Assembly (NCBI RefSeq): GCF_964204865.1
Contig: NC_135253.1
Coordinates: forward strand, 10,106,001 to 10,170,000
DNA length: 64,000 bases
Source of the DNA: Styela clava
Taxonomy: Eukaryota
Direction of reading: 5' to 3'
Positions 38,272-56,269 of this stretch are shown here, one piece after another (the stretch's first letter is position 1; every line of letters begins with the position of its first letter). The notes beneath the pieces were generated by a model. The model was not told the origin of the DNA and ran no database searches. It was given only the letters and a program-made list of their open reading frames with translations. A program made the position numbers and the translations under genes.

Positions 38272-39493
38272 TGTTACTTGTTTTCGTTGTTTTGTGCCAC
38301 GACATCGATTGTTCACGCTTATATATATATTCATATAGGTTACGGTGACGTAGTCAGGAAGCACAGAAGTTAAAGTGGACAATGCCAGATTGAGAAATAT
38401 TCTATTCAACGAAATTGGTCTGAAAGTTGTCTAAAGAATTTTTTTTCTGTCGTATACGTGACTGTGAATGATCAGAGTCGTAAGTGGAATACAGATTTTA
38501 AAATTCGTTTTAAATTTGAGTCTGTCTAAAATAGACTGACTGGTTTACTGATTACTACGATATCAGAAAAAAATCCAAAATTTGAATTTGTACATATAGC
38601 ATTCGCAACCAACGCTATTCAAGGCGTAATTTAATTATTTCAGCTTTTAAGCAATTCAGGATCTAAAAAAGTTCACAGTTCAACCCAAATTTGTATTAGG
38701 TTCCATGAGCAAAATAATGATGCACACTTGCAACTATTTTCAAATTGATATCATACAAACCAAAAGAACAACTTCTTAACATAATCGTAATTAAATTTTC
38801 ACACTCGAAATTACCCCGGATTGAAGAATAATCCAGAAGATGGAGTAATAACTCAAATGTAGGTGAAAACTTAGCTTTTAATAAGAGTTTGTAGGCCTAC
38901 GTGATTCGACAATATTAGACAAATTTTGAACCAGGAAATTTCCCATAGTTTTACTCGAATCAATAGACAACCACTGGCAACGTCGATGCCTTTTATACAT
39001 ATACTATAAAATTGAGGACATTACAACTCTTCTCTGGGTACAATGTTTACTGCTTTAAATAATTGCATTCCTCTAATGACTTCTTAAGGCGTCTTCTGAA
39101 GACGACGGTAATATGGAAAGATTAATCGTTTTTGTTGTCAATAACGCAACAGGAAACATTATTATTGAACGAAAAAAAAGTCAATATCAGTGTGTTTCTT
39201 GAGTAATCATCAAACATCTCGTCGAGTAAAATGCTTCATTAAGTTAAGAAAATTAACCTTGACTAATGTGTACCTTGCAAAAATTTCAATCAATCCACAT
39301 ATGTCGTCAATTCGATAAAATGTTAATACAAAAGTTATCACAAATTTCAACTCGATAGAAACAGAATTTAATGAAATTGATTAGTTTTACAGTAATGCCG
39401 TAACCGAAAAAAGTAGTAGTTCTTGTGCAAAGCAACAAATAAAATGTTCGGATCACAGTTAGGCTAACTGAAACTTACAATATTCGGACAATC

Positions 39494-40373
39494 ATGACAG
39501 AACAAAATCCATGGAGAAATTTAGTAGCTGGTGGCGTCGGTGGTGTAGCCACAGCTGTGAGCGGACATCCATTCGATACAGTTAAAGTTCGTTTGCAAAC
39601 CCATTCACTTCTCGGATCTACACAAATAACGTACAGAAACGCTTTAGACTGTTCAATCAAAACTTTGAAAGGAGAAGGAATAAGAGGTTTCTACAAAGGA
39701 CTGGGAGCACCAATCGCCATTGCTGCGCCCTCGTGGGCTTTGGGTTTTCTTGGTTACGAAATTGGAAAAGATGCTATTCGCTGGTATAGTGGGAATTATA
39801 CAAACAAGTTGTCTCTACTAGAAGTCTTTTTTGCTGGTGCACTGTCGGGTGCGTTTGCTGCAGCTGTTGTAGCTCCTGGAGAAAGAATGAAATGCATATT
39901 GCAAATACAGAGCGAGGTAACAAACAAAAAATATAGCGGGTTGTGGGACTGTTTCAAGACTCTATATCGCACAGGTGGGATAACGAGTATATATCGAGGC
40001 ATTATGTTGACTCTCTTCAGAGAAATTTTTGGAAACGGAGCTTTTTTCGCGACGGTTGAGTATATCAAACGTAAATTCCCAGAAGAAGAAACCTTGAACA
40101 TTCGAAATACAATTTTGGCTGCTGGTACTGGAGGAATGGTTTTCTGGGTAATTGGTATGCCGGTTGACGTTCTGAAGTCTAAATTTCAAACTGCACCAGA
40201 TGGTAAATACAACGCAATCGTAGACGTAGTAAAAGAAATTGCTCGCAATGATGGATTAATTAAAGGGGTTTTATAGAGGTTTTGGTCCGGCTATTTTGAG
40301 AGCATTTCCTTCCCATGCTTGTTGCTTCGTTGCATACGAACAAACTTTACGTTTGTTTGAAACACAATTTTGA
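39494..40373 (+). pseudogene. SLC25A20: Intronless mitochondrial carnitine/acylcarnitine carrier-like gene, frameshifted near its 3' end
   Basis: Three carrier signatures: PFDTVKVRLQ, PGERMKCILQ and PVDVLKSKFQ. The ORF stops at 40276, but FYRGFGPAILRAFPSHACCFVAYEQTLRLF continues in another frame to TGA at 40371-40373. It could be a functional gene with a sequence error. Confidence 0.8.
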
Positions 40374-40811
40374 AGAAAACAAAATAGGCCTAATGCATGT
40401 ATAGTATTTGTCATTGCACTTCAATTATATAAGCAAGTTTCGCCGGAGTAGGTCGCAGACATTTATCGAAACGCTATATGAGTAGACTTAATATATGATG
40501 TATATCTACGCACCTATCTTCCAACTTTTCAGATAACATGCTTTCTCAATCTTACTCCATTTTCACTGTTTATATAGAGATATTTAAATGTTTGCAAAAC
40601 TATAGGTCCTGTTTTTTTTTTTTTTCAAATAAACTGAATATATATTCTGAACTTAATAATGTATGCTGACAGGAAACTAAATAAATTTTCAAGCAGTTTC
40701 ACGAATAAATGAAATTTTTTATTATATATATTTCCAAATTTGGCGCGGTGTCGTCCGATGTTTTCGTTTTATCATTCCTCACAGCCGTCTTCTAGCGGAA
40801 GAATTTGGGAC

Positions 40812-41315
40812 ATAGACTATCTTGTGGGATTAGATAACTTAATGTCTTTATTATGTAGGAAATGTAATATGAAGACACGTAAACCAAAAATTCAAATTGT
40901 CTGTTCAAGTATGTATGTATTTTGCAATTTCTAATTTTAATAGAATAATGTATTCGCCGGTTTTTAGTTGTGTTTCACTAAATTTAGGTACACTGCAAAT
41001 AATTCATTGGTCATTTTTACTTCTTGGTAGTTTTAGGTAAGTTGCAGCAAATAAAAAATATAGTCCCGGACATTAGATAACCTAATGTCTTCATTATGTA
41101 GAAAAAGTAGGCTAATATAAAAACACTGTTGCCAAAAATTGATATAATGCTGGTAATCTATGTTGGTATTTATATATGTTGCAATATTTAATAGAATAAT
41201 GTGTTTCCAGTTTTTAGTGGTGTGTTCCGAAATTTAGGTATGCCAAATAATTAATGGGTCATTTTGTTTTCTCAGCGGTTTTTGTTTAGTTGCAACAATC
41301 AAGCAAGATATAGTC
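40812..41315. repeat. Diverged ~245-bp tandem duplication
   Basis: attagataac(t/c)taatgtctt...ttaatagaataatgt...aaatttaggta...gttgca occurs twice (~40829 and ~41072). Confidence 0.75.
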
Positions 41316-42370
41316 TCGAAAATGGGTTATAGAATATGCAAAAATCAGCTATCAGTAGGCTACTTTGTGATGGCCGGCGATTAAAATATTTGAATCAAAA
41401 TGAACATGTACCGGTAAATCATTTTCATGTAAGCACCAACTCGCAAATTTTGCCAACGTTAAGTGTAATACAAAATGTTTGGGTCATAACTTGGGGGAAA
41501 TTACAACCTGCATTTACTTTACATTTGGACTCCTTGCAGCACAACATGTTCATTATTTAGGACAAGACGAATGTTATGGCGCGATTTTTTTATCTCTCGT
41601 TTATACAGTAATATCTTGTGCAATATCGCAGTCTTTTTGATGTTTTTAAACTTGGCATAGGCGGTACGGTACCTGATTTCTATCGTGCGCAATTTTGTGA
41701 CTAGACTTATTGGAAATCTCGAAATACGATTTTTTGCACTGGGAGCTATTTGTTAAAAGTGTTGTGGAAATTCACAGAGGCGCAGTTCTTACCACTTCAT
41801 GGCAGCTCCTGCCACGAACGTACCACGCCGTCTCTTGCCATGGTTATTAGCAAACCGTGGCAAGTGTGTATATACCGCGGCGATGGCAAAAAGTACTGCC
41901 GTTACCGCGGCAGCTTTGCCATGGTTTCAGGGCAGCTTCGGAAAATATTTACCTGTATGCCTTATTATCATGTATGTTGCAGTATCTGGGGTTTTTGTAC
42001 TATGGATAATGGCAGGTGGGTATGGTATCAATGTGCCTCATTAGTGCGTTGCGACTTTGGTAATTTCAGTTACAGAGTCGTAAGATTTGTGAGCTGTTAT
42101 CCATGCAAGCCTCTGTCTTTTAACAATCACTCTGACTTTTTGATAGCTAGATAGTCTGCCAGTACAGCAGTAGGGTAATGCCAGAATGCGGTACCGGTAA
42201 TCTAGGTACCTTACTGCCCTATTTCTGTATCTCCAAATTTCTAGTATTCACGAGGTAGCCTACGATAAGTTGAATTATATTTTAATTTGGCTGTGTAGAC
42301 TATGTGTACTGAAGTATCTACCAGTATCTTCATATATGTTTAGATCTAGAAACACCTTATTAAGTAATAA

Positions 42371-45300
42371 ATGGCAGATACTTCTGTACTTATTTTAAGA
42401 CAAAATCAGAAAATTTTGATGATTTGTGCATAAAAGTGAATGATTTTTACCAATGCATACTATGTATCGGAGTATCATTTACAACACCAGGTGGCTTACA
42501 ACACCACCTGAAAACTCAACATATCAAATATGCTGTTCATATCATCAATGGGGATGAAAGAGGTATGTATACAGTATTACTGGTACAGCCTATAATTACT
42601 GAATATTTTCGTTGTGATGACTGGTCATTTTATAAGTCGGTATATCTTCAAATATTTTAGCTTTCATTATGCCTTGTAGAAGAGATTGTATGAAACGAGG
42701 AACAAGTGCTTTGACCAGGAGTCACTATCATTGTCCTTCCTGTGAAAAAATATTTGGACGGAGAAATTCTATGATTGACCACAGGAGGCTTACTAAGAGT
42801 AAGGGTTAAAACTATTTTGTGGCTTATTTCTTGCAAATAGAGTACCTAGCTATAACACAGTAACTTTGGAATTTCAATGTTTTGTGTAGATTGTTTGGGT
42901 GTGATTGAAAGTGAAGAAGTCAGGGATATGGACATAGATTCTAAAAACAAAAGTTCAGAAAGTCTATGTGAAGGTAAGCTAATGATTGAAAAGATGTTCT
43001 AATGGATATTTAGCAAGTATTAGGTATTGAGTTGGTGTCCGCTTATAGATATGAGAGCATAAATAATTGTTTATTGCATGTCAAGAAAACTCGTGCATTG
43101 AAATTTTGTGATTTGTATCTATTTCTTTACCACTTTTACATGATTCATTTTCATTCGATATTTTTTTCACATTTTTAGACCTTGTTCGTTTACATACTTT
43201 TACTTTACAGGTACTTTCAACTTTCAATGCATACCTTGTGACAAGCGCTTTAGGCATCAGTCGTCATTGAGGCGACATGCTCAACTTAAACACAATGCAA
43301 CTCAGCTTTTACCGAGCGTATGTGTTGACACATTCAATGGAATCTATATGTTGCTCAAAGTGATTCTGGCCCACTTGCTCCAATTCATGTTCAAAAGCAC
43401 ACATTGAAACAAAAAATTATGTGCACTGATGACGACTGTATTTCAATTATCAAAGCCATTTCAACAGTCAATCCAGGAATCCAATGTCGACATTTGGACT
43501 CTATCTCTGAATCTTCAATTTTAACGACAAACAAACTGCAACTGTCATCGCTAAACCGACTAAGGGAATTTAATATATCGAATGATTCGTCGGTTCAATG
43601 GTGCAAAAATATGAAGGAAATCAGTGAAAAGGATTGCTGCACTCTTGTAGCCCTTGTTGATTTTTCAACAATGGGTTTCGAAACAAGAACAATCTATTTT
43701 TCCGTTTACACTGAAAAAATTCAATATTTTGCACCATTGAAGAGGGTAAGAGTTTCTTTCAATAAAGATAATGGGGAATTTTCGTGTCATTGTATGGTTT
43801 AAACTTCTTATTGGTATAAAATACGAATTTTGTATTTCGACCAAATAATTTTGCCTAAGTCGAAACGTTAGATAATAGCCTGTGATATTATACCCAGATA
43901 TTTAAATCATGCTTCTATGTTTTATTCCTTAACAACTATTTTTACGAGTTATTATAAATGTTTGCACAGCAACTGAATTATTCATCAAGGAATGTGCTGA
44001 ATGTGGAATGGAAGTTAGATATCAAGAATATGAAGAAGGTTTTCATAATTTTGACAATAGTGTTTTATTGAGTCTCAAGTTGTGTTGTTATTTACTGCGT
44101 GGACTGAAAGTGAGTTATTGATTATTGCCGTTTACTGGTCTATTATGGACAAAGCAGCTCAAAGGCGTGTGCTAAATTCACATAAATATTTGTTCTATTG
44201 CATTATTTGTTCTGGTCAAATATGGTTTGCAAGGTTATACTATAAAATACAATTTTAATTCCACTGTTTAGAATCATATCTCAATCGAGAGCAATCTAAA
44301 AATGTTGTTCATCGAAACTATTCCTTATAATAAGATCAGGAATGCGTTCTTGCATTTTTTGGCTCTCCAAGACTATCAATACGACTTTTGTTGCTTGAAA
44401 TGTGGAATATATCCAACAGTGCTGATATGTGATGGTAATTGGAAAAACACGTGCAGAAGACCAGGTAACATTAGCAACATTATTTGGCTGCGCATTTAAA
44501 ACATAGCTGATGAAATATCACAAGCTGTAAATTTGGTATTTCGTTTACATACAGTTGGAGCCGTTGACAAAACCCAAAATACTTGTGACCTCATTGATGT
44601 AGACGCAACTTGGGAAAAATATCAGATGGAAATTATAGGAAGAGGATTTTATGGTCAGGAATACATTTACTTACTTGAATTATGCGTACAGATCTATCTC
44701 GTGGACAATCCGACAGTATCAATACCACGTTGTTTTGTTTAAAAACATTCAAGTGGCCTAGTTTATCATAATTATGGAAATTTGACACTAAAATTATTAA
44801 TTAACTTTATTTGGTTTTTACCTAGCTTTTATTTTAAATTTTTCTTTGCTTTTGTTCACGTTTCACATGTTATTTGATAGTTTCTGTATTAGTTTATGTA
44901 TCCAGTTCACTGATCTCAACCTTATGAATAACCAGGCTGTAAGGAGAATCCATGGAAAGTGGAAATAATGTACAACACAGTTGCACCTTGGATATCTCCA
45001 GAATGCCGATTTTCAAGTGAAGTCCCAAATACAGAGCATAGGAAAGGATTTATTCTTAACAAGCCAGTTGTTGAAAAGCCTCTAGCCTACTCCAAAGTCT
45101 CTCATGAAGATATTCTCCAAGCTATAAAGTATAAACTCTCCTCTTGTAGGCATACTTTTTTCTACCTTTTTGTCTCACAAATAGTCAAAAATGACCAAAT
45201 GCCTTGATTTAAAAACAAAAATTTGACACTGCAATAATTACAATAGTTTTTGTTTTAATTTTGGTGTTTATACTGTACAGATATATATATTTTAAAACTA

Positions 45301-48300
45301 TAGCTATATATTTAAAAACTATTATTTGAGGCAATTGCTCTTATTTTGCAGACATCTGATTCTCGTTTGATAGACTTGTGTGAAGTCTTGGGTATAAGTA
45401 GCAAAGGGAGTTCAGAAGACCTTGTTAATACTTTGAATGAGCTGGTTCTGTTTAAGGATGTATGCCCTAAGATGTACAAAAGCATAAAACATTGCGGTGG
45501 TTGGTATTATTGTTTTATTAAAGAAATGTTTATCTTACTTAGGTCTAATGTCAATGGTTGCATTTTTGCTGTATTTATCTTTTCTACATTATCGCTATGA
45601 TTTATTACAATGTAATACTAAAGAGCAATGGATAACTTTTCTTATTTATATCTTGTGCAGCTGACAATGATTTGGGATTTTGCTGCATGATCAAATGGCT
45701 TGAAAGAGATTTTCATCATTATTTTTTAGGAGGGATTGTACATTTTCGTTGCCCACATGGGATATGCTATTATATGAAATATCTTCTAAGACAGGGAAGT
45801 GCTAGAGATTATATTGACGGAATATTGTCCCTGAAGAGACAACCTCATGCTATAATATCTGACATTGCTTCCCAAGTGAGTTCTTTTTAGTTTAAGTCAC
45901 TGTGGATATACATATTTTTAAATATTCTATATTTGATATACAAAAGTATTCACAAATAATGTGTAATTTATATTAATATTAAGGGAACTTTGATACTGTG
46001 TATTAAACTGCAGGTCCTTTCTCCTTGTTTACTTTCTACTTCGGATCCGTATGTGGTACTCCGAATATGCGCTATTCGATTAAGTTATCTCTTGTATTGT
46101 TTGAAGAAGTTAGACCATGATCTAACGAAAGCTCACAAATATACTTACTGTTTCGTTGAAAGAGATCATTTCACTTATATTAATATGTTTTGTTCATTCC
46201 TCCAACTTTGGTCAGAATACTCTTCAAACACTATTATCTGTTTTCAGGTAGCCCATCATGGCGAGGCTAGAAAAAGGGGTATTTTTGGGCCTGATAAAGG
46301 AATGCTGTTTGCATATACTGACAAAAATCTTGAATTGGAAAAACATGGCTCTCTACCACAGGTCAAACTGGATGCTCATAAAAAATACAGCCTCTGTGAT
46401 AGGTTCCATACAAGATCGAAGAAAAAGACCGCAGAAAATTCTTTTCGCAACTTGAAGTACTGCTCTGATTTGAACATAAATACCAGTGTGGCAGAGCAGG
46501 AAAATGCTCACATGGCAAAAGATAGGCAAGCTTCCATCTTATTCAACCACCCCTCTTTTTTTTAATATATTTATATTGTGAAGTGAACCAGGGTATGGTG
46601 GCCTCGAAATGACAGTACAAGAGCTTCCGAAACACTGTTGTATATGTGACCTAAATCAATGCACAATATTCAGAAAACTGATGACTGAGGTTTTCGAGGA
46701 ATATCTTTCAACAAACCAATTTTTTGTCCAGAGGGTTTGTTTGTTTGCTAGATGGGAAATTTCTCCAGTTCAGATACCAATTGTGGCATGTCGTATTTGA
46801 CATTTTTCATACTATTCAGTGATTGGCCATTAATACACAAATGCTTCAATCGAGGATGTATTGATAGTTTGCTTATTGAAAAGATATTGTTAATGGTAGA
46901 TGGATCATATTACTATTTAACTCATGTTGTGATGTACATTGTCGATTATTTTGAGGCAATAAAGCATGACCATTTAATGTTAATAGGCAGAAAATTAATT
47001 TGATGCTATGACACGTATAAAAAAACTCAAGATAGTTGGAAATTGATATTTTACTGAGAAGAATCGCTTGAATATTGACATGTTTTAAGAGTTCATGCTG
47101 TGCGAATATGTTTGGTAAAATGCTTTACAACCTTACTTGTAGATCTTCAGTTTGCTCTATGGACACTACCAATTTCCTTTGGCTTTCGCGAGTTAGCATT
47201 AACCTGCGTAATAAAGACATAAACTCAACATATGAAAAAAAAATGAAGACTCAAGTTGGAAATAAAATTCGGAGGAATCATGAAGGAATTGCTATACCAG
47301 ATGTTAAAGGTACATGATTTTCATGTTATTGAGTAATGTGGATATATTTTCTCACTACACACCTCATTTTAGGTAACGTTTTAGATGGAACCAGTGGATC
47401 GGTCACAGAGGTATGCATGTATTATTAAATTTGGTTTCATGTGAATGCATAGTATTGTAAAATAAAAGTAGAATAAGACATTTACGATTTATAAAGGTCT
47501 GCTTTTGCGGTTTCCGACAATATCATTAATCAAGTATAAAAGATATCTTTAAAATGTTAATGGCTTTATGTTATCCCATTCTTTCGAGTTATCGTAAATG
47601 TACAAACCTGTAAATGAATTGTAGCAATTTCTTAGTTATACTATGTAATGCTTTTTTCTAATATAAGATTTAGGAAGGAATTAAACAGAATTCTATTATA
47701 TGTGTCTTATAATTCATGCTACTACCTACCTACATCGATTATATTTCCTGAGGTTTGAAAATTTAGGAAGAATTACTCATCGACGAAGATGATGAAGCTA
47801 TGAATGAGGTAGTTGCCAACCCTGAAGACAATGTGTACTCTGAAAATATAGTGAGATAATTTTTTTCTTGCTCTTACCGCTTTTGTATTATAATGCATTG
47901 TATCGAGTTTGATATGTGGAGTTATGAATTTTTTGCATGATGGTATTGATCAAATTATCTATGCCAGGAGTCTCCAAAACGCTGCCCATGAGGCAATTTT
48001 TCGGCCTGCGTCACGGTTGAGATTTTTCCACAAAACTGAAATAGTACGATGTTCACTATGAGTGAGTTTTATCATGTTATTTGACATCAGGAGTCTGGCC
48101 TGACAAACTATAATAGGTGAAACAAACATTCCCCCCTATTCCACTTTATTGCGCTCATATTTCATTGTATTGTTTTAATTAACTTGTAAATTCAAGAATT
48201 TCATTCTGCATTATTTATTATAACGAAATAAACGAGTTTCGGTCACATAATTGTGTTCGAAGAAAGCTTCGCAAAGTTAATTTATTGTGTCATATTTTTT

Positions 48301-51300
48301 TTCAAATTCCTACTTCCTATTAAAGCAGAGTGGAATGACTACTGGAACAGTGTCACAATATCAAGAAGATCAGACATTTTGGTAAGTATTTGCATTTAGA
48401 GGATGAGTATACCATGTGTTTCAACGATGTAATGATTAAAATGAATATTTAACGATGCTTTATATGGTACATTCTTCAATCTCATAATATGCTGAAGCCT
48501 TCAAAGAAGTTTATATTTCTATTAAAATGTCATCCACAATTTTCAGTCTTTCTTACTTTATCTTCATACTTATGGGTCAAACTTTTCATTGCAGTTCAGC
48601 AAAAATGAAATCAACTTCATGCAGTGATGGTAATATTTATGACTCCGAGAATAAAGGTGGGAGTTACTTGGTTTATCGTTAAGATGTCTTGGTATAATAC
48701 TTATCTCTAATTATTCATTTACATTTTTCAGATAGTGATGAATCAAGAAAATGTCTTTTTCTGCCTGCCAAATTTAATGGTAAATTTTATAATATTCATT
48801 GTATTGAATTTTTCTTTAAAATTTGATATATTTTGGTAATTGTCTGAATGATAGTTTTTTGAGCAATAGCTGATCTCCTTCTATATGACAATACTTTGAT
48901 TTTATGAGGTTATTATGAGGCGTTATTATTCAATGAATGATTCAGTTTTGTTATCAGTCATAGCGTTGCAATTACGTGTTACTGATAATGCTATGCATAA
49001 TATTATCTTAAGAACTCAGTGTGTACATAACAAAGGAACTGTACAGCCATGTTCATAGTTTGGAAATCACTCAGATGTTATGCATGTACACAAGTACTAA
49101 TTTATACAGGAGTATTACCATCAGAATGTAACCATCATTTCTAGTTTGTGTAAGATTGTTTATAAAATTGAACTTATAGTTTTTCAATAATTATTTTTAT
49201 TTCAAATGCTACCAACTTTGCTGAAGATAATAGATGGAATAATTGCAGCTCTTTGTCATAAGGTATGTCTTTTAGTATTGTTCATCTCTGTATTCCATGT
49301 GGAACTGTGACATCTCCATAAATTATATTTCAGTCCGAAATTTCTTATTAGTGACTCAGTTTATTATTATGTTAATCTTTCTAAATCAACTTGTTTTTAG
49401 TGGACCAGTCATACTCAATATAGCGCTCTGTCTGCATTATATTCCACAATGTGGTTTTGGGAGGGGATTTATCGTCGAAAGTACAAAAGTTTGGTAAAAT
49501 AACATGTTTATTATTTTTGATCATTGTTTATTCGCTTTCGTTACCATCCTATTTTACATCCAGGCCAAGTTGACTATTGAAAAACCAACTATGAGTGCTG
49601 TGAACCATGGCAATCACTGGACTCTAATGGTAGGTAAATTGCTAGATCTTTGTTAATTTAAATGAAATTCTTTAGGAAAATTTTCTTCTCAAATGCAATT
49701 ACAAAATGTTTCAATATATCACGTCAAAACAAATATGGCATATTCTGTATTGTATTGCTCTTCAAACCAGAAATTCTTCTACTCTTGTGAACAAAGTTTC
49801 ATGTTTTCAGATTACAGATCCATCTCAAGGGAGTGTCATTATTTATGACCCTGTTGGCCATGAAGAGAGTTATGCTGAAACGCTGATGGAGAATTGGAGG
49901 TTTGTGGTTTTCTGCTTGACTAAATGATTATTGGCTTGTAAACACTCACAGATTCATTTTAAATTATCATGCCCTTATTGAGTTCAACGATAGAACATCA
50001 ATGTTTTAGTCATGCATTCAAATCTCTACTAGTGTTATCTGAATTTTAAAACATCAAAAACAGATTACCGAAACTGTATGGATCGTACGAGTTTTTTGCA
50101 CTGAGATTGCAAGCTAGGTATGAAAGCGCATATTAGCAAGAATATGCAGTTCTCAGAACACTTCAAAAAAAAGTTAAGGATCTAGAAATGAAATTGTTCC
50201 TATGTGTTGTGACTTGTGGGACTAATCAGGGCTGTTCTTTTTTTTACGTTTTCTCCCAGGAAATTTTGGAAATACCATGGAGGTGACAAAAGAGATTGGA
50301 GACTGTTAACAAACAAGCATAGGGAACAAGAAGATGGGTTCAATTGTGGAATTTTGGTTGTGAAGGTACATCGGGTCCAATTTGTTTTTATAGTGGTATT
50401 ATTAAACTGATAAGGATGCACACAGGCTCATTACGGTAGATCTTTAAATTTTCATTTATATTTGTGAGTAAACATTTACTACTAGTAGTACTTTATATTG
50501 ATACCACCACCATTCAACTGGAACCTTATTTTTAAATCATCTCATTGGTGCAAATCTATAGAAATATGAGTTGTTTTATTTTTTTACATTCTAGGCTGCC
50601 GAAGCAATCTTAACAGGTTGTACAACGGATTTCAATCATTCGACAGGCATCTGTAATGTCTACAGAATCCATTTTGGAGACCTTCTGTTGGAAGCCACAG
50701 GTGCATTATTATTTTATTAACTAGGTCTAAGCATAAGTCATTTTTATTCAAGTGTGGAGAGCAGTGCTGGAAGTCGAGTAACAACTAGCACCATAACATC
50801 TATGCGGTCACAGATATGTTGGTAGCACACAGCTATATTTTGATGATATTTAGAACTTTCTTTTGAACATGGCTAAGTGGGTTATAAAACTCAGAGCCCA
50901 GAGCTTTAATTTGATGATGTTGAAAAATGGAATGGAAAAGGAAGTTAATTAAGTATCGGATTGAGGTCAATATTGATCGTGTATGCAAAGAAATTTTACT
51001 CATTTTTGCGGTTGGTTAGAATCTGAGGAGGAATATACATGACTATATTAGTTAGGTATTTGCAATCCTACATTTGTTTTCCTTCATCTTTTAGATGTTG
51101 ATGAGCTGGCACACTTTTGTGTGGGCTGTAATGGCAGGACTGCCCCTGATGGTGGCACACTTTGGGTAAGGTCAAACATTTTCCTTATGGATGCAGTTTT
51201 GATGGATAAAGTAAAGTAATAATTTTGTTGTAGGTCGAATGTGATGGATGCGAAAGGTGGTGCCACCAATATTGCGCAGATTTTGCGGGTAACGAAGATT

Positions 51301-51323
51301 TTTTCTGTGAACACTGCACATAA
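42371..51323 (+). pseudogene. Zisupton-type polyprotein gene: C2H2 fingers, partial SWIM, Cys cluster, KDZ transposase with SAP insert, Ulp1 (C48) protease, PHD finger; contains lesions
   Basis: Exons ~42400-42562, 42661-42798, 42890-42973, 43211-43791, 43970-44109, 44272-44464, 44555-44653, 44936-45129, 45352-45499, 45730-45875, 46248-46525, 47143-47309, 47373-47410, 47767-47850, 48329-48381, 48595-48656, 48732-48779, (49013-49127 unresolved), 49227-49262, 49401-49493, 49564-49629, 49811-49899, 50260-50365, 50595-50700, 51095-51165, 51234-51323. Motifs: SHYHCPSC, RYQEYEEGFHNFD, VLICDGN, APWI, CPHG, IISD, DRFH, NTSVAEQ, NHW, YDP, QEDGFNCG, WVECDGCERWCHQYC...FFCEHC. AATAAA at 51351. The start codon is uncertain. 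Confidence 0.85.
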
Positions 51324-52146
51324 AACTTAAGTTTTTGTGTAATTTTCTTTAATAAAATTTAATAACATGCACAATGTCATACTTCTTTTTTGGAATTTGA
51401 TGTTCGCTAGTTGAGGTTCCTCATCTGCCTGTAAATATTATAGAAATATTCGAGAATTGTCTTAACAAATAGTTGACATATCTAAGTGGCTTTGTCATAA
51501 AAGGATTCCAGTGTCAACGATGGAGATAGTGAGTGTGCAAGAAGCTAGCTGTGGTACACAATCAGCTTTAAATTATTGCAACAACAAACCCTTATGTTGG
51601 GTAATTTATGAGAGCATTACCCTCTCTCTTTTTTATCGCATGCAATCCATTTCTTGTTTTCACGGATTGCCCTCACCCCCCACTACACCCCTAAAACGAG
51701 AGAGACTGGCATGTTTTCATTTTAAGTTAAAAGTTATCTGTCTGTATTGGGAAATCAGAAACGAAGAGAAAATAATATGTTGTTACTGCATATAATTAAT
51801 GCAACTGGTTATAATTTGTCCCTGAAAAAATGGATGTAGTGCCACATTATAAAATACTTCCATTCCCGTTTTCTTACAAAGAGTGGCTTTTTCGGGGTAA
51901 AGGAAAAATTCAAGTGGTACCGGTTCGCAGAAAGTAGAAGGTTGAGAACCCCTACTGTAGATGAATCGCCTAGCAGGGTAAATGCAATTTTAATCAAACC
52001 CAACCGACACAATTTTACTCTGGTAGTACTGCGATCTAATTTGAATCAATATGACTAAAAAAGACACAGCGCAAATGATATACAACATTATTTATTGCCA
52101 GAGGAAGTAATGGCACCTTACTTCCAACCAGCCATTACTTCCTAAC

Positions 52147-52895
52147 CAGAGTTGGATCAATTACACTAATTCAGTTCAATTACAAATACAACTACTCCTG
52201 TACTCCCTTAAATGTTTCAATTACATTACAATTACTCCGTGCAAAAAATATCAAACTGCATTTACAATTATAACATTTTGGTTCGTATTTACATTTTCCC
52301 TTGCTCAAGAACTGTTGGATTGCACTTAATGAAGATTAGGCTGCGAAAAGTTTCTGAACCCAATAAATTTCTTCATGCTGTATAAAAGTTATCCGCAATT
52401 GAAAAAACTCTTTCTGACGGGGCTGATGTTGCTGTAATTCAGCGTGGGAAATTTTTCTGATTTCTTCTTCCAATACATTAATTGGTCTTCATCAAATTGC
52501 AAAATTTCTTCCCCCAAATAGCTATTTACATCACTTTCTGATTTTCTTGGTCCTTTCCTCTATTTATAGATATAGATGGGGAGAACATCTCTTCAAGTGC
52601 GTTTGATGAAGCCTTTTTTGAAGTTGTTACAGCCTGCCTCAGTGCTGCTCAAAGATTTAAAAAACTCTGACAATGGTGCAAGAAGTGGTTCAACACATGT
52701 TTCGGAAGAGTTTGTTTAATGTTCATCCATTTTCAAAATACTAAGATTTAGTCTAATTGAAAGTGTAATTGAGCCAGAATTTTAGCAAATTACAGTTATG
52801 ATTACACAGAATGAAAATGCCTCCATTCAGTCATTACATTACAATTACATAAAAAACTGTAAATAATACCATAAATTACAAATGATCCAACTCTG
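52147..52895 (-). mobile_element. Internally deleted hAT (Ac-like) element nested in the right arm of the Zisupton
   Basis: TIRs cagagttggatca / tgatccaactctg with aattac subterminal repeats. A minus-strand remnant ATSAPSERVFSIA...RNLLGSETFRSLIFIKCN matches the hAT C-terminal dimerisation motif. Near-TSD cttcctaac / cttccaac. Confidence 0.85.
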
Positions 52896-53959
52896 CTTCC
52901 AACTGCACCCTACCGGTACTTCAAAGCAATATACACCCAATGCTGACTTCATTTGTAACGCCAAATCATTTCCTTATTACTCTTGAATGCAAACAAAACA
53001 ACAAACAACACTGAATGCTAATCTCGGTTCTTCAGTTGATGGCAGCAACCAACTTGTCGCCGCGCTCCCCGTTATCCCGCCGTGGTAATGCGCAATTAAC
53101 CACAAGGTTCCCCGCTATCTTCCACTGTTCATGGCGAGAAATCTTTCGCTACCACAGGTTATTCCTACCTGCCGTAACCGCGGCAGCTCCTGCCGTGGTT
53201 ACGGCAGCTCTTGCCGTGGTTACGGCAGCGTAACTACGGTTCATGGCAGTATAATTTCACCTGCCGTGGTTTTCAATTTGCTGCCGTGGTACCCCGCCTC
53301 ACGCCATTGTTTGTGGCAGCTTGAAAGTTAGCCGCCGTGGTTTGGTCATTGTGGCCATGGTTTGGAGATTCCGCCATGGTTTTGCGGCAGCTTCAGATGC
53401 CGCGAAATACTTAAAACTGCACTTGAATTCACAAGTAATATTTTTTCGATGTAATTTCTTGGACATGGATAAGTAATTGAAATCGAGATAAAACAATAAG
53501 CAGATATTAATTAATATCATGAGTAGCCTATGTTTATATTTTAGTAGACTACTTTGAAAAAAAATGGAAAGATCTATTGAACATCCCTGCATGCTGCATC
53601 CAACTAATCCCATACGATACAGCGATATGGAATGGTAACCGGACGAGAGGCCGTAGTTCGGCTTTCCTCTCTCCCGGGATAAATATATATAAATTCTTAT
53701 CCAAATAATTTCTGTAAGCTACCATCAGAATAACATTTTGCATGAAACAAGCTTCATAAATTCTAGTTTAAAGGAATAATGGAGCTTCTTTCTGTATTTT
53801 GAGTCCCAAATAGTTGCTAAGTACCATACTAATATTGTAATTATTGAATAAAAATACATCCATTGGAAAGATGAAAACCGCAATGTTTGAACTGTAAGAA
53901 TTTGTTATTCATCCTCTCTTTTCTTACTTTTGTCTGTTTGTATTAGCCATTAACAAGAA

Positions 53960-55801
53960 ATGGCTCCTATATGTAATAAGTTTAAACCTAAGCATATGAA
54001 ATATGAGATTTTATGTGCAATAAAATCATGTCAATTGCGAGGATTACTTCAAACTGTCAAGTGGCTTGCCGAGTTGTCAGTATCTTTAAAATGTGATCCT
54101 GAAACACCTCAAAGAGGTGATGGCTGTGGGAAATTTGTTATTGGTTTTGATGTAGATGCTGATGGACAACATACTAATCAAAAACCATCTGATAATTTCA
54201 CTCTGGCGAAGTCCTATTTTGATCTTGGTGAATATGATAGATGTGCACATTTTCTTTCCCAAGATACAAGTAAGTTAGGATACTTCTTGCATGTGTATTC
54301 ACGTTATCTGTCTGCTCTAAAGACCAAACAAGTGAGCCAGATTGACAATCACAATATAGCAGAAAGATCTTTGTCGAAAAATGAAGACTTACGAACACTT
54401 CGTGTCGAACTTTGTAAAAAACACAAAAATAAGGAACTAGATTCTTTTGCTCTGTATTTGTATGGCATTGTGTTAAAGAAAACATCAGATGGAGCTGCAC
54501 AACAAAATGAAGCAGTTAACATACTATGTCAATCGGTGCGTGAATATCCAATGAACTGGAGTGCTTGGTATGAATTATCAACTGTTGTTGCTGATCAAGC
54601 AATGTTGGCAACTCTCCATCTTCCAAAACACTGGATGAGGGATTTTTTTCTGGCACTCACTAATGTTGATCTTATAAATACTGATGATGCTATCCCAATT
54701 TATAATGAACTGAAATTAGCAGGATTTGCTGAAAGTACACACATTAAAACACAAGAAGCAATGGCTCATCATAATAAAAGAGAATTTGACGAAGCAATCA
54801 CAATTTTGGAAGACATCAGAAAAGATGATCCATTCAGAATTGAGCATATGGATATATTATCTAACATGTACTATGTCAAAGGCCGTCGAGCAGAATTAGC
54901 TCATTTGGCACATCATTGCACTCAAGTTGACAAATATAGAGTAGAAACATGTTGCATTATTGGAAATTATTATAGCATAAGGTCTAACCATAACAAGTCT
55001 GTTATGTATTTTCAAAGGGCTCTCAAACTTGACCCTCATTATCTTGGTGCATGGACGCTAATGGGCCATGAATATACAGAGGTGAAAAATACATCTGCAG
55101 CAATACAAGCTTATAGAAATGCTGTGGATTTGAATAGAAGAGATTATAGAGCTTGGTATGGTCTTGGCCAAACATACGAGTTACTCAAAATGCCTTCTTA
55201 TTCTTTATATTATTATAAACAAGCTCATAGACTACGGCCATTTGATTCAAGAATGCTCATGGCTTTGGGTGACACTTATGAAGCACTGCAAAGACCTGAA
55301 GAAGCAAAGATGTGTTTCAGGAAAACAGTTGCGGTAGGAGATATTGAAGGAATGGCCCATGTTAGACTTGCCAAGTTGTACAAGACAGAAGACAAAAAAG
55401 ATTGGGCTGCACATTATTATGATCGTTTTGTGCAACAGCTTGAAGAACATGGCATTGTTGAAGGTACATCTGCCCATACAGAAGCCTATTTATATCTTGC
55501 GAATTATCATTTAAAAACATCTAAAAATCTTGATGCTGCTACTCATTATGCTCACAAATGCCGTGAATACCCTGAGGTTCGAGAAGATGGCATGGCAGTT
55601 CTGCGTCAGGTATCTCAAATACGTGCTTGCGCAGGCTCAAGGAAAGAAGAAAGGCTTCCTGTCAATTTTACACAACCTACCCCAAGTCACTTGCAAGATA
55701 GTGTTGGCATGGACACAGATTCTCCCAGTGCCAATTTTGCTCCAATGAAACTAACATTTTCACCGGGTCAGGCAGATTCTGACACAAGCAATTTGATGTA
55801 A
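53960..55801 (+). CDS. CDC23: Cell division cycle protein 23 (APC/C subunit APC8), intronless CDS, 613 aa
   Basis: N-terminal RGLLQTVKWLAEL and LAKSYFDLGEYDRCAHFL. TPR region DKYRVETCCIIGNYYS...AWTLMGHEY.E.KNTSAAIQAYR...RDYRAWYGLGQTYE. Confidence 0.97.
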   Translation: MAPICNKFKPKHMKYEILCAIKSCQLRGLLQTVKWLAELSVSLKCDPETPQRGDGCGKFVIGFDVDADGQHTNQKPSDNFTLAKSYFDLGEYDRCAHFLSQDTSKLGYFLHVYSRYLSALKTKQVSQIDNHNIAERSLSKNEDLRTLRVELCKKHKNKELDSFALYLYGIVLKKTSDGAAQQNEAVNILCQSVREYPMNWSAWYELSTVVADQAMLATLHLPKHWMRDFFLALTNVDLINTDDAIPIYNELKLAGFAESTHIKTQEAMAHHNKREFDEAITILEDIRKDDPFRIEHMDILSNMYYVKGRRAELAHLAHHCTQVDKYRVETCCIIGNYYSIRSNHNKSVMYFQRALKLDPHYLGAWTLMGHEYTEVKNTSAAIQAYRNAVDLNRRDYRAWYGLGQTYELLKMPSYSLYYYKQAHRLRPFDSRMLMALGDTYEALQRPEEAKMCFRKTVAVGDIEGMAHVRLAKLYKTEDKKDWAAHYYDRFVQQLEEHGIVEGTSAHTEAYLYLANYHLKTSKNLDAATHYAHKCREYPEVREDGMAVLRQVSQIRACAGSRKEERLPVNFTQPTPSHLQDSVGMDTDSPSANFAPMKLTFSPGQADSDTSNLM

Positions 55802-55838
55802 TAAACCAATTATTGAACAAAGAGTCCAGCAATCTTTT

Positions 55839-55964
55839 CTTGCACACAATGATGTGAATGTATTTTGTATTTGATATAAAAATCAAGTTTGAGCATTTGG
55901 TAATTCTCTCTTGCACACAATGTGACTGTATTTTGTATTTGATATAAAAATTAAGTTTGTGCAA
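55839..55964. repeat. ~70-bp tandem duplication in the CDC23 3' region
   Basis: cttgcacacaatg...tgtattttgtatttgatataaaaat.aagtttg.gca occurs twice. Confidence 0.8.
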
Positions 55965-56269
55965 TTAGCATATTATGAGCAACCCTGTGAAAGCAGAAAG
56001 TGGGACATGACCAACACATTATTCTGAACTCATTGAACTGTCTGTCCTATTTTTTTCTCAGTTAGCAATTTCAAAACTGCATATAGTGATGTCTCTTGCT
56101 TTGCTACCTCAGGACTGGCGAAAATCTTGTGATTAGCAATTTTCAACTTTGGAAAAATCATTCTATTATTAAACAGGCTTATATATGAAATGATAGCACA
56201 TGATTTTATGTAAAATTTGGATTGCAAATTGATTTGAAATGAAAAACGACACAGTGAATAAAATGAAAT

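What the first reader, a model, noticed from the sequence alone, without database searches (positions are those of the whole stretch)
49227..51323. Transposon carries an intact Ulp1 SUMO-protease triad fused to a terminal PHD finger
Seen: His (NHW, exon 49564-49629), Asp (YDP, 49811-49899) and the oxyanion Gln plus Cys (QEDGFNCG, 50260-50365) are all intact. They are followed by a complete C4HC3 PHD (CVGC...WVECDGCERWCHQYC...CEHC*). I found no lesion in this 3' module. Inference: a histone reader coupled to a deSUMOylase could remove SUMO-dependent silencing marks at its own locus or steer target-site choice, i.e. a transposon-encoded anti-silencing system. I am not sure whether the PHD fusion has been described for Zisupton.
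Basis: partly seen in the sequence, partly recalled or inferred. Interest (0 to 1): 0.75.

Follow-up and report, generated by a model that had tools for sequence, protein, structure and literature searches.

The report
Zisupton transposon with protease-PHD tail
The last exons of a recently mobile sea-squirt DNA transposon do encode a SUMO-protease-like domain followed by a PHD zinc finger, as related elements do, but this copy has lost the domain's first exon, and the proposed anti-silencing role is untested.

Summary
The motifs and exon borders are real. RNA-like contigs from three studies carry all five splice junctions between exons A-F (49564-51323), and a DNA-like run carries none. These exons, with three upstream ones, tile the last 264 residues of a 1432-aa Clavelina protein, P0025 (94 of 257 identical). 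P0025 passes Pfam's Peptidase_C48 cut-off and ends in a PHD-like finger.

The host element (window 41777-53425) is a young Zisupton-type transposon of Styela clava, with 8-bp target duplications in 6 of 6 copies.

Three corrections:
- This copy is not intact. A 0.41-kb deletion at 49008-49013 removed the 125-nt first exon of the protease domain. The frame from the transposase therefore breaks, as NCBI's own model (P0001) shows.
- The only contigs crossing 48780-49400 are unspliced there, which puts a stop at 48824-48826. One contig end shows the first of these splices.
- Protease plus PHD is not peculiar to this element. A second S. clava Zisupton family has the same tail with the same intron position. 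The scan had already noted this architecture on other DNA (s1-809848, s1-825793).

Substrate, histone reading and anti-silencing remain inference. I rate it a new member of a known kind, of moderate-to-low interest.

The parts
41777..53425 (+). Whole transposon copy (11.65 kb), an internally deleted member of a six-copy family
   Evidence: BLAST of window 36001-56000 against five other copies gives common ends at 41777 and 53425, at 95-99% identity
41769..41776 (.). Target-site duplication AATTCACA, left copy
   Evidence: The same 8 bases stand at 53426-53433. 6 of 6 copies each have their own 8-bp duplication
53426..53433 (.). Target-site duplication AATTCACA, right copy
43785..43793 (+). Junction of a 1.3-kb internal deletion (9-bp microhomology). 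It removes the second half of a SWIM-like finger and a cysteine-cluster exon
   Evidence: All 5 other copies carry about 1.3 kb more here. In C1 the open frame reads ..GEFSCLCPTSGMSSTCYHEAVAKW..
43933..44118 (+). Open stretch with a CxC4 cysteine cluster (a KDZ-associated domain)
   Evidence: Pfam PF18717, 27.0 bits against a cut-off of 26.9, E 4.5e-6
46248..46525 (+). Transposase exon, followed by a GC..AG intron (46526-47142)
   Evidence: RNA contig joint 46522->47140 with 3 ambiguous letters, in 3 runs; sequence. 47% identical to P0025 754-847, E 2.6e-21
47143..47309 (+). Transposase exon
   Evidence: Joints; matches P0025 852-884, E 2.9e-11
47373..47410 (+). Exon
   Evidence: Joints 47309|47373 and 47410|47767 in 3 RNA-like runs, 0 in the DNA-like run
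47767..47850 (+). Exon (acidic linker)
   Evidence: Joints
48326..48381 (+). Exon, with an alternative acceptor at 48329 in X8
   Evidence: Joints
48595..48656 (+). Exon
   Evidence: Joints
48732..48779 (+). Exon ending at the donor G|GTAAAT. In the contigs the RNA runs on unspliced from here
   Evidence: Joint 48656|48732. A loose end in X8 at 48779 continues with the first letters of the 125-nt exon of the other copies
48824..48826 (+). TGA that ends the transposase frame when the intron after 48779 is kept
   Evidence: Frame bookkeeping exon by exon
49008..49013 (+). Junction of the 0.41-kb deletion (6-bp microhomology). It removed the 125-nt first exon of the C48 domain
   Evidence: 4 of 5 other copies carry 397-425 bases more here by the anchor distances (407-420 by the BLAST gaps), and the fifth has a larger deletion. 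RNA and DNA contigs carry the piece. The exon was found with AG/GT in C4b, C1, C18 and C8, and not in the window
49227..49262 (+). Predicted exon IIDGIIAALCHK (C48 N-terminal helix)
   Evidence: AG/GT borders in 5 of 5 copies that have it. Aligns to P0025 1207-1218. Its acceptor is used in NCBI model P0001. No RNA contig joint was seen
49401..49493 (+). Predicted exon ..LYSTMWFWEG..
   Evidence: Donor 49493|49564 seen in 3 runs. Matches P0025 1226-1241, E 3.7e-9. The acceptor was not seen in contigs
49564..49629 (+). Exon A, catalytic His (49615-49617)
   Evidence: Joints. VNHGNHWTLM matches P0025 VN-GNHWLLM, E 1.9e-4. That column aligns with GSHW of SENP8
49811..49899 (+). Exon B, catalytic Asp (49847-49849)
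   Evidence: Joints. IIYDPVG lies under YLYDSFG of P0025
50260..50365 (+). Exon C, oxyanion Gln (50327-50329) and catalytic Cys (50345-50347)
   Evidence: Joints. KHREQEDGFNCG matches P0025 KHNQQKDFMNCG. That stretch aligns with QQNSYDCG of SENP8
50595..50700 (+). Exon D, end of the C48 domain
   Evidence: Joints. Matches P0025 1352-1375, E 4.3e-7
51095..51165 (+). Exon E, first zinc knuckle of the PHD finger (FCVGC..TLW)
   Evidence: Joints 50700|51095 (3 runs) and 51165|51234 (2 runs). The intron falls at the same place as in a second S. clava Zisupton family
51120..51207 (+). 88 bases (end of exon E plus start of the intron) shared with a MITE family of about 430 bp
   Evidence: 37 of the 43 matches listed at 84-94% identity. 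The repeat carries both termini of this element
51234..51323 (+). Exon F, rest of the PHD finger and the stop codon
   Evidence: Pfam PHD 21.6 bits, E 2.2e-4. KDM5B and KDM5A PHD3 are the best solved matches. P0025 1404-1432

Best explanation
Shown. Window 41777-53425 is one copy of a young cut-and-paste DNA transposon of Zisupton (KDZ) type in Styela clava. The family's many-exon transposase gene carries a C48 (Ulp1/SENP-like, clan CE) cysteine-peptidase domain at its 3' end, with His, Asp, Gln and Cys in place. A C4HC3 PHD finger follows and ends the reading frame. The same order (transposase, C48, PHD-type finger) stands in a Clavelina protein and in a second S. clava Zisupton family. So the tail is an inherited part of these transposases, not a peculiarity of this locus. 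This particular copy is defective. Two internal deletions remove part of the SWIM/CxC region and the first exon of the C48 domain, and the frame from transposase to module is broken.

Inferred. In complete copies, removal of three short introns between 48780 and 49400 yields a transposase-peptidase-PHD fusion. Keeping them yields a transposase that stops before the module, so splicing may decide which protein is made. The PHD finger, most like the third PHD fingers of KDM5A/B, which I recall as H3K4me3 readers, would hold the protein on histone H3 tails. The peptidase would then remove a ubiquitin-like modifier (SUMO, NEDD8 or ubiquitin; undecided) from chromatin proteins or from the transposase itself at the site of action.
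For: Transposon:
- 6 copies at 95-99% identity share the same ends, and 6 of 6 have 8-bp target duplications.
- A passage of PMC12730594 says Zisupton makes 8-bp duplications.
- CxC4 is at Pfam's cut-off on the window and scores 33-39 bits on relatives.
- A MITE family carries both termini.

Module:
- GT..AG joints for all exon borders from 49493 to 51234 appear in RNA-like runs of 3 studies and in 0 contigs of the DNA-like run.
- Nine exons tile P0025 1169-1432 end to end, 94 of 257 identical, with per-exon BLAST E down to 3.7e-9 in collinear order.
- P0025 scores 28.2 bits on Peptidase_C48, above the cut-off of 20.7.
- Its His, Asp, Gln and Cys columns align with SENP8 and ChlaDub2.
- Exon F hits PHD at E 2.2e-4, with PHD3 of KDM5B/KDM5A on top in the PDB.
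- In the second family the homologous last exon scores 35.9 bits, above the cut-off of 24, and the intron lies at the same place.

Fusion frame:
- Donor 48779 (phase 1), the 125-nt exon, 49227-49262 and 49401-49493 all have AG/GT borders and fit in phase in C4b, C1 and C8.
- A contig end in X8 shows the splice from 48779 to the 125-nt exon.

Defect of this copy: and NCBI model P0001 ending ..PAKFN DNRWNNCSSLS.
Against: - None of the six C48 exons submitted singly reaches any Pfam hit; one further piece in that call of seven was exon F, which hit PHD. None of three reaches a C48 hit in the PDB. The C48 call rests on a relative.
- Pfam's KDZ transposase model PF18758 finds nothing in this genome. 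That search also rang in no control genome, so it is uninformative. The same model finds nothing on the full-length relatives P0025, P0027, P0026, P0029 (E up to 0.1) and P0012, P0007 (E up to 0.01), all scanned whole.
- The terminal inverted repeat is short and imperfect. I read it by eye, and it is not among the 25 longest of 216 inverted pairs.
- Every listed contig crossing 48780-49400 is unspliced there, and no joint 49262|49401 is listed. So the fused reading frame is not shown on any RNA.
- No database protein of this family carries the module.
- Exons vary less than introns among copies only weakly: 7 of 458 against 34 of 1078 columns, p = 0.08. The window copy has 5 private exon changes, 4 of them amino-acid changes, against 3 intron changes.
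- P0025's own finger gets no Pfam PHD hit at E up to 0.1.
- There is no functional evidence of any kind.
Confidence: 0.65

Rival explanations
1. The protease-PHD exons are untranslated cargo. The working transposase ends at the TGA at 48824-48826 in the intron-retaining RNA. The tail then lies in the 3' untranslated part as a relic of an ancestral fusion that this family no longer makes.
For: All listed contigs that cross 48780-49400 in X1, X2 and X8 are unspliced there, and no joint 49262|49401 is listed. No annotated protein of this family with the module was found.
Against: - Ten exons keep AG/GT borders, open frames and matching phases in 3 of 6 copies.
- Catalytic residues and zinc ligands are kept against a 37%-identical relative.
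- X8 shows the splice out of 48779 into the 125-nt exon.
- Contigs drop rare forms, so absence of a joint proves nothing.
Confidence: 0.15
2. The fusion is made, but the finger is not a histone reader. It is a general zinc module, like the cysteine clusters of KDZ transposases, that binds DNA or a partner protein. The peptidase acts on the transposase itself, by self-processing or by removing its own modifier, rather than on silencing factors.
For: A passage of PMC12062965 places a CxC7 cysteine cluster at residues 1333-1393 of the platyfish Zisupton protein. By the size of such proteins I take this to be near the C-terminus. P0025's finger ends C-x-H-H and gets no Pfam PHD hit. Exon F is under Pfam's cut-off.
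Against: Exons E and F hit no CxC family at E up to 10, and exon F hits only PHD models. I read 16 of the 20 solved-structure matches of exon F as PHD fingers. The homologous exon of the second family passes the PHD cut-off. The Trp before V-x-C-D and the Trp in C-x-x-W-x-H, which I recall as the methyl-lysine cage of KDM5A PHD3, are both present.
Confidence: 0.15
3. The tail is a recently captured fragment of a host SENP-like gene and a host PHD gene, with no role for the element.
For: Transposons do pick up host exons. I recall that plant MULEs carry captured Ulp1-like domains.
Against: The same order, and the same intron inside the finger, are found in a second, distant S. clava family and in Clavelina, so the tail is old. 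Searching the genome with exon C finds only the six copies and no host gene.
Confidence: 0.03

Closest known systems
Zisupton superfamily of DNA transposons (KDZ: Kyakuja-Dileera-Zisupton), first described in platyfish (Bohne et al. 2012; not held, recalled)
   Same: - 8-bp target duplications (passage of PMC12730594).
- A many-exon gene with proteins above 1000 aa (passages of PMC9297572).
- A KDZ-associated cysteine cluster.
- A SWIM-like finger in complete copies.
- An Ulp1-like protease. I recall this as the 'su-p' of the name, but no call verified it.
   Different: The last domain scores as a PHD finger. The only C-terminal zinc module I could read about for the platyfish element is a CxC7 cluster (PMC12062965). 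Pfam's KDZ model does not detect this tunicate lineage.
P0025, unnamed protein product of Clavelina lepadiformis (1432 aa)
   Same: Same order of parts: C2H2-like fingers, SWIM-like finger, CxC4, transposase core, linker, C48 domain, terminal finger. The window's exons tile its last 264 residues.
   Different: Only 37% identical in the tail. It has a long repeat linker, and its finger ends C-x-H-H instead of C-x2-C.
Second Styela clava Zisupton family at G000:C4:16460001-16480000
   Same: C48 exons are followed by a two-exon PHD finger split after the same Trp (CSMCGTATPHGTW | LGCDACDRWFH..).
   Different: It is a different family, closer to P0027. Its last exon is a canonical PHD (35.9 bits), and it is an 18.5-kb element according to that note.
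SENP/Ulp1 C48 peptidases (SENP1, SENP8/NEDP1) and chlamydial ChlaDub2
   Same: His-Asp-Cys triad with the oxyanion Gln, in the same order and local motifs (GxHW, YDS/P, Q..x.CG).
   Different: Very distant (E 0.04-0.3 for P0025), so the substrate cannot be inferred. These are cellular or bacterial enzymes, not transposase tails.
Third PHD fingers of KDM5A/KDM5B (recalled as H3K4me3 readers)
   Same: V-x-C-D-G-C-x-x-W-x-H-Q-x-C and ..ED(Y/F)(I/F)C..C match exon F.
   Different: The last loop is 4 residues shorter, and Cys stands where Phe follows the Trp. Binding is untested.

Membership tests
Zisupton / KDZ DNA transposons | 8-bp target-site duplication | tested here: met
   6 of 6 copies, each with a different 8-mer. 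The rule is taken from a passage of PMC12730594.
Zisupton / KDZ DNA transposons | Terminal inverted repeats | tested here: inconclusive
   By eye about 18 of the first 28 bases pair, with a core GCAGTT. The pair is not among the 25 longest of 216 inverted pairs. A GGCAGCTCCTGCC motif lies near both ends.
Zisupton / KDZ DNA transposons | KDZ transposase core (Pfam PF18758) | tested here: inconclusive
   No hit on 20 open stretches of the element, on P0025 or P0012, or in the genome (where no control rang either). The Atlas puts HMGXB3-like clusters at 0.96 and 0.92 and KDZ clusters at 0.89-0.83, which are leads only.
Zisupton / KDZ DNA transposons | KDZ-associated cysteine cluster (CxC4, PF18717) | tested here: met
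   27.0 bits against a cut-off of 26.9 on window 43933-44118; 33.4-39.3 bits on P0007, P0012, P0025, P0026, P0027 and P0029.
Peptidase C48 (Ulp1/SENP, clan CE) | Score above Pfam PF02902 cut-off | tested here: inconclusive
P0025, which they tile, scores 28.2 bits against 20.7. P0005 scores 54.2 and P0027 41.4.
Peptidase C48 (Ulp1/SENP, clan CE) | His, Asp, oxyanion Gln and Cys present in order | tested here: met
   GNHW, YDP and Q-x5-C-G in exons A, B and C align to P0025. P0025's columns align to SENP8 and ChlaDub2.
Peptidase C48 (Ulp1/SENP, clan CE) | Whole domain encoded in this copy | tested here: not met
   The 125-nt exon for the start of the domain is deleted in the window. It is present with AG/GT borders in C4b, C1, C18 and C8.
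Peptidase C48 (Ulp1/SENP, clan CE) | Isopeptidase activity on SUMO or another modifier | not testable with these tools
   Needs an enzyme assay.
PHD finger (PF00628) | C4HC3 ligands with PHD spacing | tested here: met
   C-x2-C-x14-C-x2-C-x4-H-x2-C-x10-C-x2-C, read from exons E and F.
PHD finger (PF00628) | Score above Pfam cut-off | tested here: inconclusive
   Exon F alone scores 21.6 bits against 24. Exon E alone has no hit. The homologous last exon of the second family scores 35.9 bits. P0025's finger has no hit.
PHD finger (PF00628) | Binds a histone H3 tail | not testable with these tools
   Needs peptide binding assays.

The most novel reading that the evidence does not exclude
Tunicate Zisupton transposases carry a chromatin-tethered modifier-peptidase: a PHD finger that reads active-chromatin H3 tails, joined to a C48 enzyme. 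The element uses it to strip SUMO-type silencing marks or to choose insertion sites. Its production is gated by keeping or removing three short introns, much as I recall P-element activity being gated by one intron. The retained form would give a tail-less transposase.
Probability: 0.12. Interest if true: 0.7.

Novelty: new member of a known kind. Interest (0 to 1): 0.35.

Why it matters
Protease domains of the Ulp1 type recur in several transposon superfamilies, and nobody knows what they do there. A family that is young, transcribed, correctly spliced and represented by several complete copies is a workable case for asking that question. It helps that a recognisable histone-reader finger sits right behind the protease. 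The possible splicing switch between a tail-less and a tailed transposase adds a second testable point.

For the genome itself the result is ordinary. It is one more Zisupton copy, and a broken one.

Tried and rejected
- Pfam exon by exon gave a hit for 1 of 7 pieces and for 0 of 10 further open stretches, so it cannot show C48 on this copy alone.
- PDB sequence search with exon C, exon B and the 125-nt exon gave 0 C48 matches in 3 queries. Exon C hit a beta-trefoil repeat by chance.
- P0005 (Ciona) proved too distant for exon-level BLAST.
- An alignment of P0025's tail with the exons as separate rows came out scattered (A2). I used it only for the YD column, not as a profile.
- The search for homologous proteins with P0025's tail found only P0025, and with P0001 found no other S. 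clava protein of this family. Its length window means shorter or longer models could be missed.
- The diverged copies on C19 and C10 are decayed deletion derivatives and too short for a selection test.
- Two giant intronless frames with a weak C48 match turned out to carry UCH plus a weak PHD. They are a different thing, and I dropped them.
- No structure was predicted.
- Papers: 'Zisupton'+'Ulp1' gave 0 papers. 'Zisupton'+'PHD' gave 10; I read passages of one, and there the two terms are unrelated. 'transposase'+'Ulp1'+'PHD finger' gave 5, none relevant by title and abstract start.
- Bohne 2012 and Iyer 2014 are not held, so what I say of them is recalled. I did not open any supplementary files. 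Domain tables there could bear on whether a PHD tail is in print.
Full report
**What is at the coordinates.** Read directly, the + strand between 49564 and 51323 holds six short exons with AG/GT borders and matching phases:

| Exon | Coordinates | Content |
|---|---|---|
| A | 49564-49629 | ..NHGNHWTLM |
| B | 49811-49899 | ..SVIIYDPVGHEE.. |
| C | 50260-50365 | ..KHREQEDGFNCGILVVK |
| D | 50595-50700 | end of the protease domain |
| E | 51095-51165 | ..FCVGCNGRTAPDGGTLW |
| F | 51234-51323 | VECDGCERWCHQYCADFAGNEDFFCEHCT, then stop |

Exons E and F together give C-x2-C-x14-C-x2-C-x4-H-x2-C-x10-C-x2-C, a C4HC3 pattern.

**RNA evidence.**
- One search for sequencing runs listed 15 runs, 13 of which hold the stretch, from 4 studies.
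- I laid three RNA-like contig sets (X1, X2, X8, from three studies) and one DNA-like set (X10) on window 45900-51400.
- The joints 49493|49564, 49629|49811, 49899|50260, 50365|50595 and 50700|51095 are in 3 of 3 RNA-like runs, and 51165|51234 is in 2 of 3. All are GT..AG, and none is in X10.
- Upstream joints at 46525|47143 (a GC..AG intron once the three ambiguous letters are placed), 47309|47373, 47410|47767, 47850|48326, 48381|48595 and 48656|48732 continue the same gene.
- Single contigs link these exons to exons A and B (1430 nt in X1). Another links the stretch before exon A to exons A-D (1274 nt in X8). The module is therefore not a separate gene.
- At the sites where the window differs from its sister copies (49839, 50323, 50341, 50657; 51299 in X8 only), the contigs carry the sister allele. 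The RNA seen thus comes from other copies of the family.

**What the element is.**
- Searching the genome with the DNA found five more copies at 95-99% identity, plus decayed relatives on C19 and C10.
- All copies begin and end at the same bases (window 41777 and 53425). 6 of 6 are flanked by their own 8-bp duplication, here AATTCACA.
- A passage of PMC12730594 states that Zisupton makes 8-bp duplications. Passages of PMC9297572 describe Zisupton as many-exon elements with proteins up to about 1400 aa, found among others in lancelets, sea stars and mussels.
- An open stretch at 43933-44118 reaches Pfam's cut-off for the KDZ-associated CxC4 cluster, 27.0 against 26.9 bits.
- Pfam's KDZ core model finds nothing on the element, on its full-length relatives or in the genome. 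The genome search rang in no control either. An Atlas look-up puts the core next to HMGXB3-like clusters (0.96, 0.92) and KDZ clusters (0.89-0.83), which are leads only.
- I file the element as Zisupton-type on the duplication length, CxC4, gene structure and relatives. The transposase-core test is open, and the inverted repeat was read only by eye.
- A source names the window's own gene product as a Styela clava protein on a contig of the same length as ours.

**Is the module a C48 peptidase plus PHD finger?**
Alone they are too short. Pfam hit only exon F: PHD at E 2.2e-4 and 21.6 bits, against a cut-off of 24. Three PDB searches gave no C48 match.
- I therefore looked for natural full-length relatives. 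A 92-aa transposase exon found 24 representatives. From one of them, the search for homologous proteins listed 9 proteins of Clavelina, Styela, Ciona and a fish. 3 of the 9 carry PF02902 and 0 of the 9 carry a PHD family in the precomputed column.
- P0025 (Clavelina, 1432 aa) scores 28.2 bits on Peptidase_C48, above the 20.7 cut-off. It ends in YCLMC..WVSCEECRRWCHEIC..CQHH.
- Aligned one at a time, nine exons of our family cover P0025 1169-1432 in order, without gaps between exons. 94 of 257 residues are identical, including GNHW, YD, Q..NCG and 7 of 8 zinc ligands. Collinear BLAST hits reach E 3.7e-9.
- P0025's protease part aligns weakly (E 0.04-0.3) with ChlaDub2, SENP8 and SENP1, with the catalytic columns in register. 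Which modifier is cut cannot be told from this.
- Exon F's best solved matches are the third PHD fingers of KDM5B and KDM5A (E 0.006-0.008). From the molecule names I read 16 of the 20 matches as PHD fingers.

**The tail is not special to this family.** Its minus strand holds a Zisupton closer to P0027. After its C48 exons come CSMCGTATPHGTW, an intron, then LGCDACDRWFHSEC..WRCPLC. That last exon alone passes Pfam's PHD cut-off, 35.9 against 24 bits. The intron splits the finger after the same Trp as in ours. Transposase-C48-PHD is thus an inherited architecture of tunicate Zisuptons. A second note (s1-825793) reports yet another such gene with an extra SprT-like end. I did not test that one.

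**What is wrong with this copy.**
- The sister copies carry about 1.3 kb more at window 43785-43793 and 0.41 kb more at 49008-49013, each bordered by a few shared bases.
- The first piece holds the second half of a SWIM-like finger and a cysteine-cluster exon.
- The second holds a 125-nt exon with AG/GT borders, encoding ..KLWKSTHRNRIECVVGD..CLLEGDSYLDDK. This aligns to the start of P0025's protease region.
- With it, donor 48779, this exon, 49227-49262 and 49401-49493 fit in phase and lead from the transposase frame into exon A. Without it (125 = 3 x 41 + 2) the frame shifts. NCBI's own model for this locus, P0001, ends ..PAKFN DNRWNNCSSLS.

Across the six copies:

| Copy | State of the ten tail exons |
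|---|---|
| C4b, C1, C8 | all ten present, with intact borders and no stop |
| window | lacks the 125-nt exon |
| C18 | 7-bp deletion over exon B's acceptor |
| C14 | lacks everything up to exon A |

**The open point.**
- Every listed contig that crosses 48780-49400 is unspliced there and includes the 0.41-kb piece. In that RNA the transposase frame stops at TGA 48824-48826.
- Only one contig end (X8, at 48779) continues with the first letters of the 125-nt exon, which shows that splice. No joint 49262|49401 is listed.
- Contigs drop rare forms and their depth cannot rank forms. So I can say only that a tail-less reading frame is certainly transcribed, and that the fused one is supported by gene structure, by relatives and by one junction. 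A splicing switch is a reasonable hypothesis, not a finding.

**Selection.** Among copies, substituted columns are 7 of 458 in exons against 34 of 1078 in introns (Fisher p = 0.08). The window copy alone has 5 private exon changes, 4 of which alter the protein, against 3 in introns. That fits a dead copy. The better argument for function is the conservation of the tail between families and species.

**Function.** From the anatomy I think the most likely working is a transposase that brings its own modifier-peptidase to chromatin through the finger. The likeness to KDM5 PHD3, and the two Trp residues that I recall as its methyl-lysine cage, point to active rather than silenced chromatin. That would suit target choice at least as well as de-silencing of the element's own locus.

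**Novelty.** I recall Ulp1-like proteases as the name-giving feature of Zisupton. The PHD tail is present in public tunicate proteins and was noted earlier in this scan. I found no paper on it, but I could not read the two founding papers or any supplements.

Noticed in passing
window 51120-51207; L013:2181-2607, L014:2527-2946, L015:2515-2940, L017:2267-2668: A repeat of about 430 bp carries both termini of this Zisupton, plus 88 bases from the end of exon E and its intron. 37 of the 43 matches listed are of this kind, among them a run on C16 4796230-4942944. It looks like a MITE family mobilised by this transposase. It explains the extra DNA depth and the loose ends at 51175 and 51207 in read laying.
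   Followed up: partly
window 43785-43793: A 1.3-kb internal deletion with 9-bp microhomology fuses ..GEFSC to HCMV. It removes the second half of a SWIM-like CxCx10CxH finger and a cysteine-cluster exon that all five sister copies keep.
   Followed up: partly
window 46526-47142 and 48326/48329: A GC..AG intron is used in three RNA-like runs. A tandem acceptor three bases apart (48326 or 48329) is seen in X8.
   Followed up: no
L011:4906-8029 (G000:C19): A decayed relative (74-88% identical) in which the 5' terminus is joined directly to window position 49610. It keeps exons B, D and F, with all zinc ligands of F, and lacks C and E. L012 (C10) keeps only E and F, with a TGA.
   Followed up: partly
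window 41800-41815 and 53169-53228: A near-palindromic motif GGCAGCTCCTGCC lies close to both ends of the element and recurs in the MITE. It may be a transposase binding site.
   Followed up: no
L020:2882-8416 (-) and L021:3352-8328 (-): Two intronless frames of 1844 and 1658 aa gave a weak C48 match in the genome scan. On Pfam they carry a UCH ubiquitin hydrolase domain (41.5 and 41.8 bits) and a weak PHD (21.5 and 21.4 bits). They are unrelated to this element.
   Followed up: partly
P0025 residues 480-900 (Atlas look-up): The clusters nearest to the transposase core are named HMG domain-containing protein 3 (scores 0.96 and 0.92). This hints that the vertebrate HMGXB3 gene is kin of these transposases.
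   Followed up: no
window 39494-40276 (+): A 260-aa open frame just upstream of the insertion looks by eye like a mitochondrial carrier. I did not test it.
   Followed up: no
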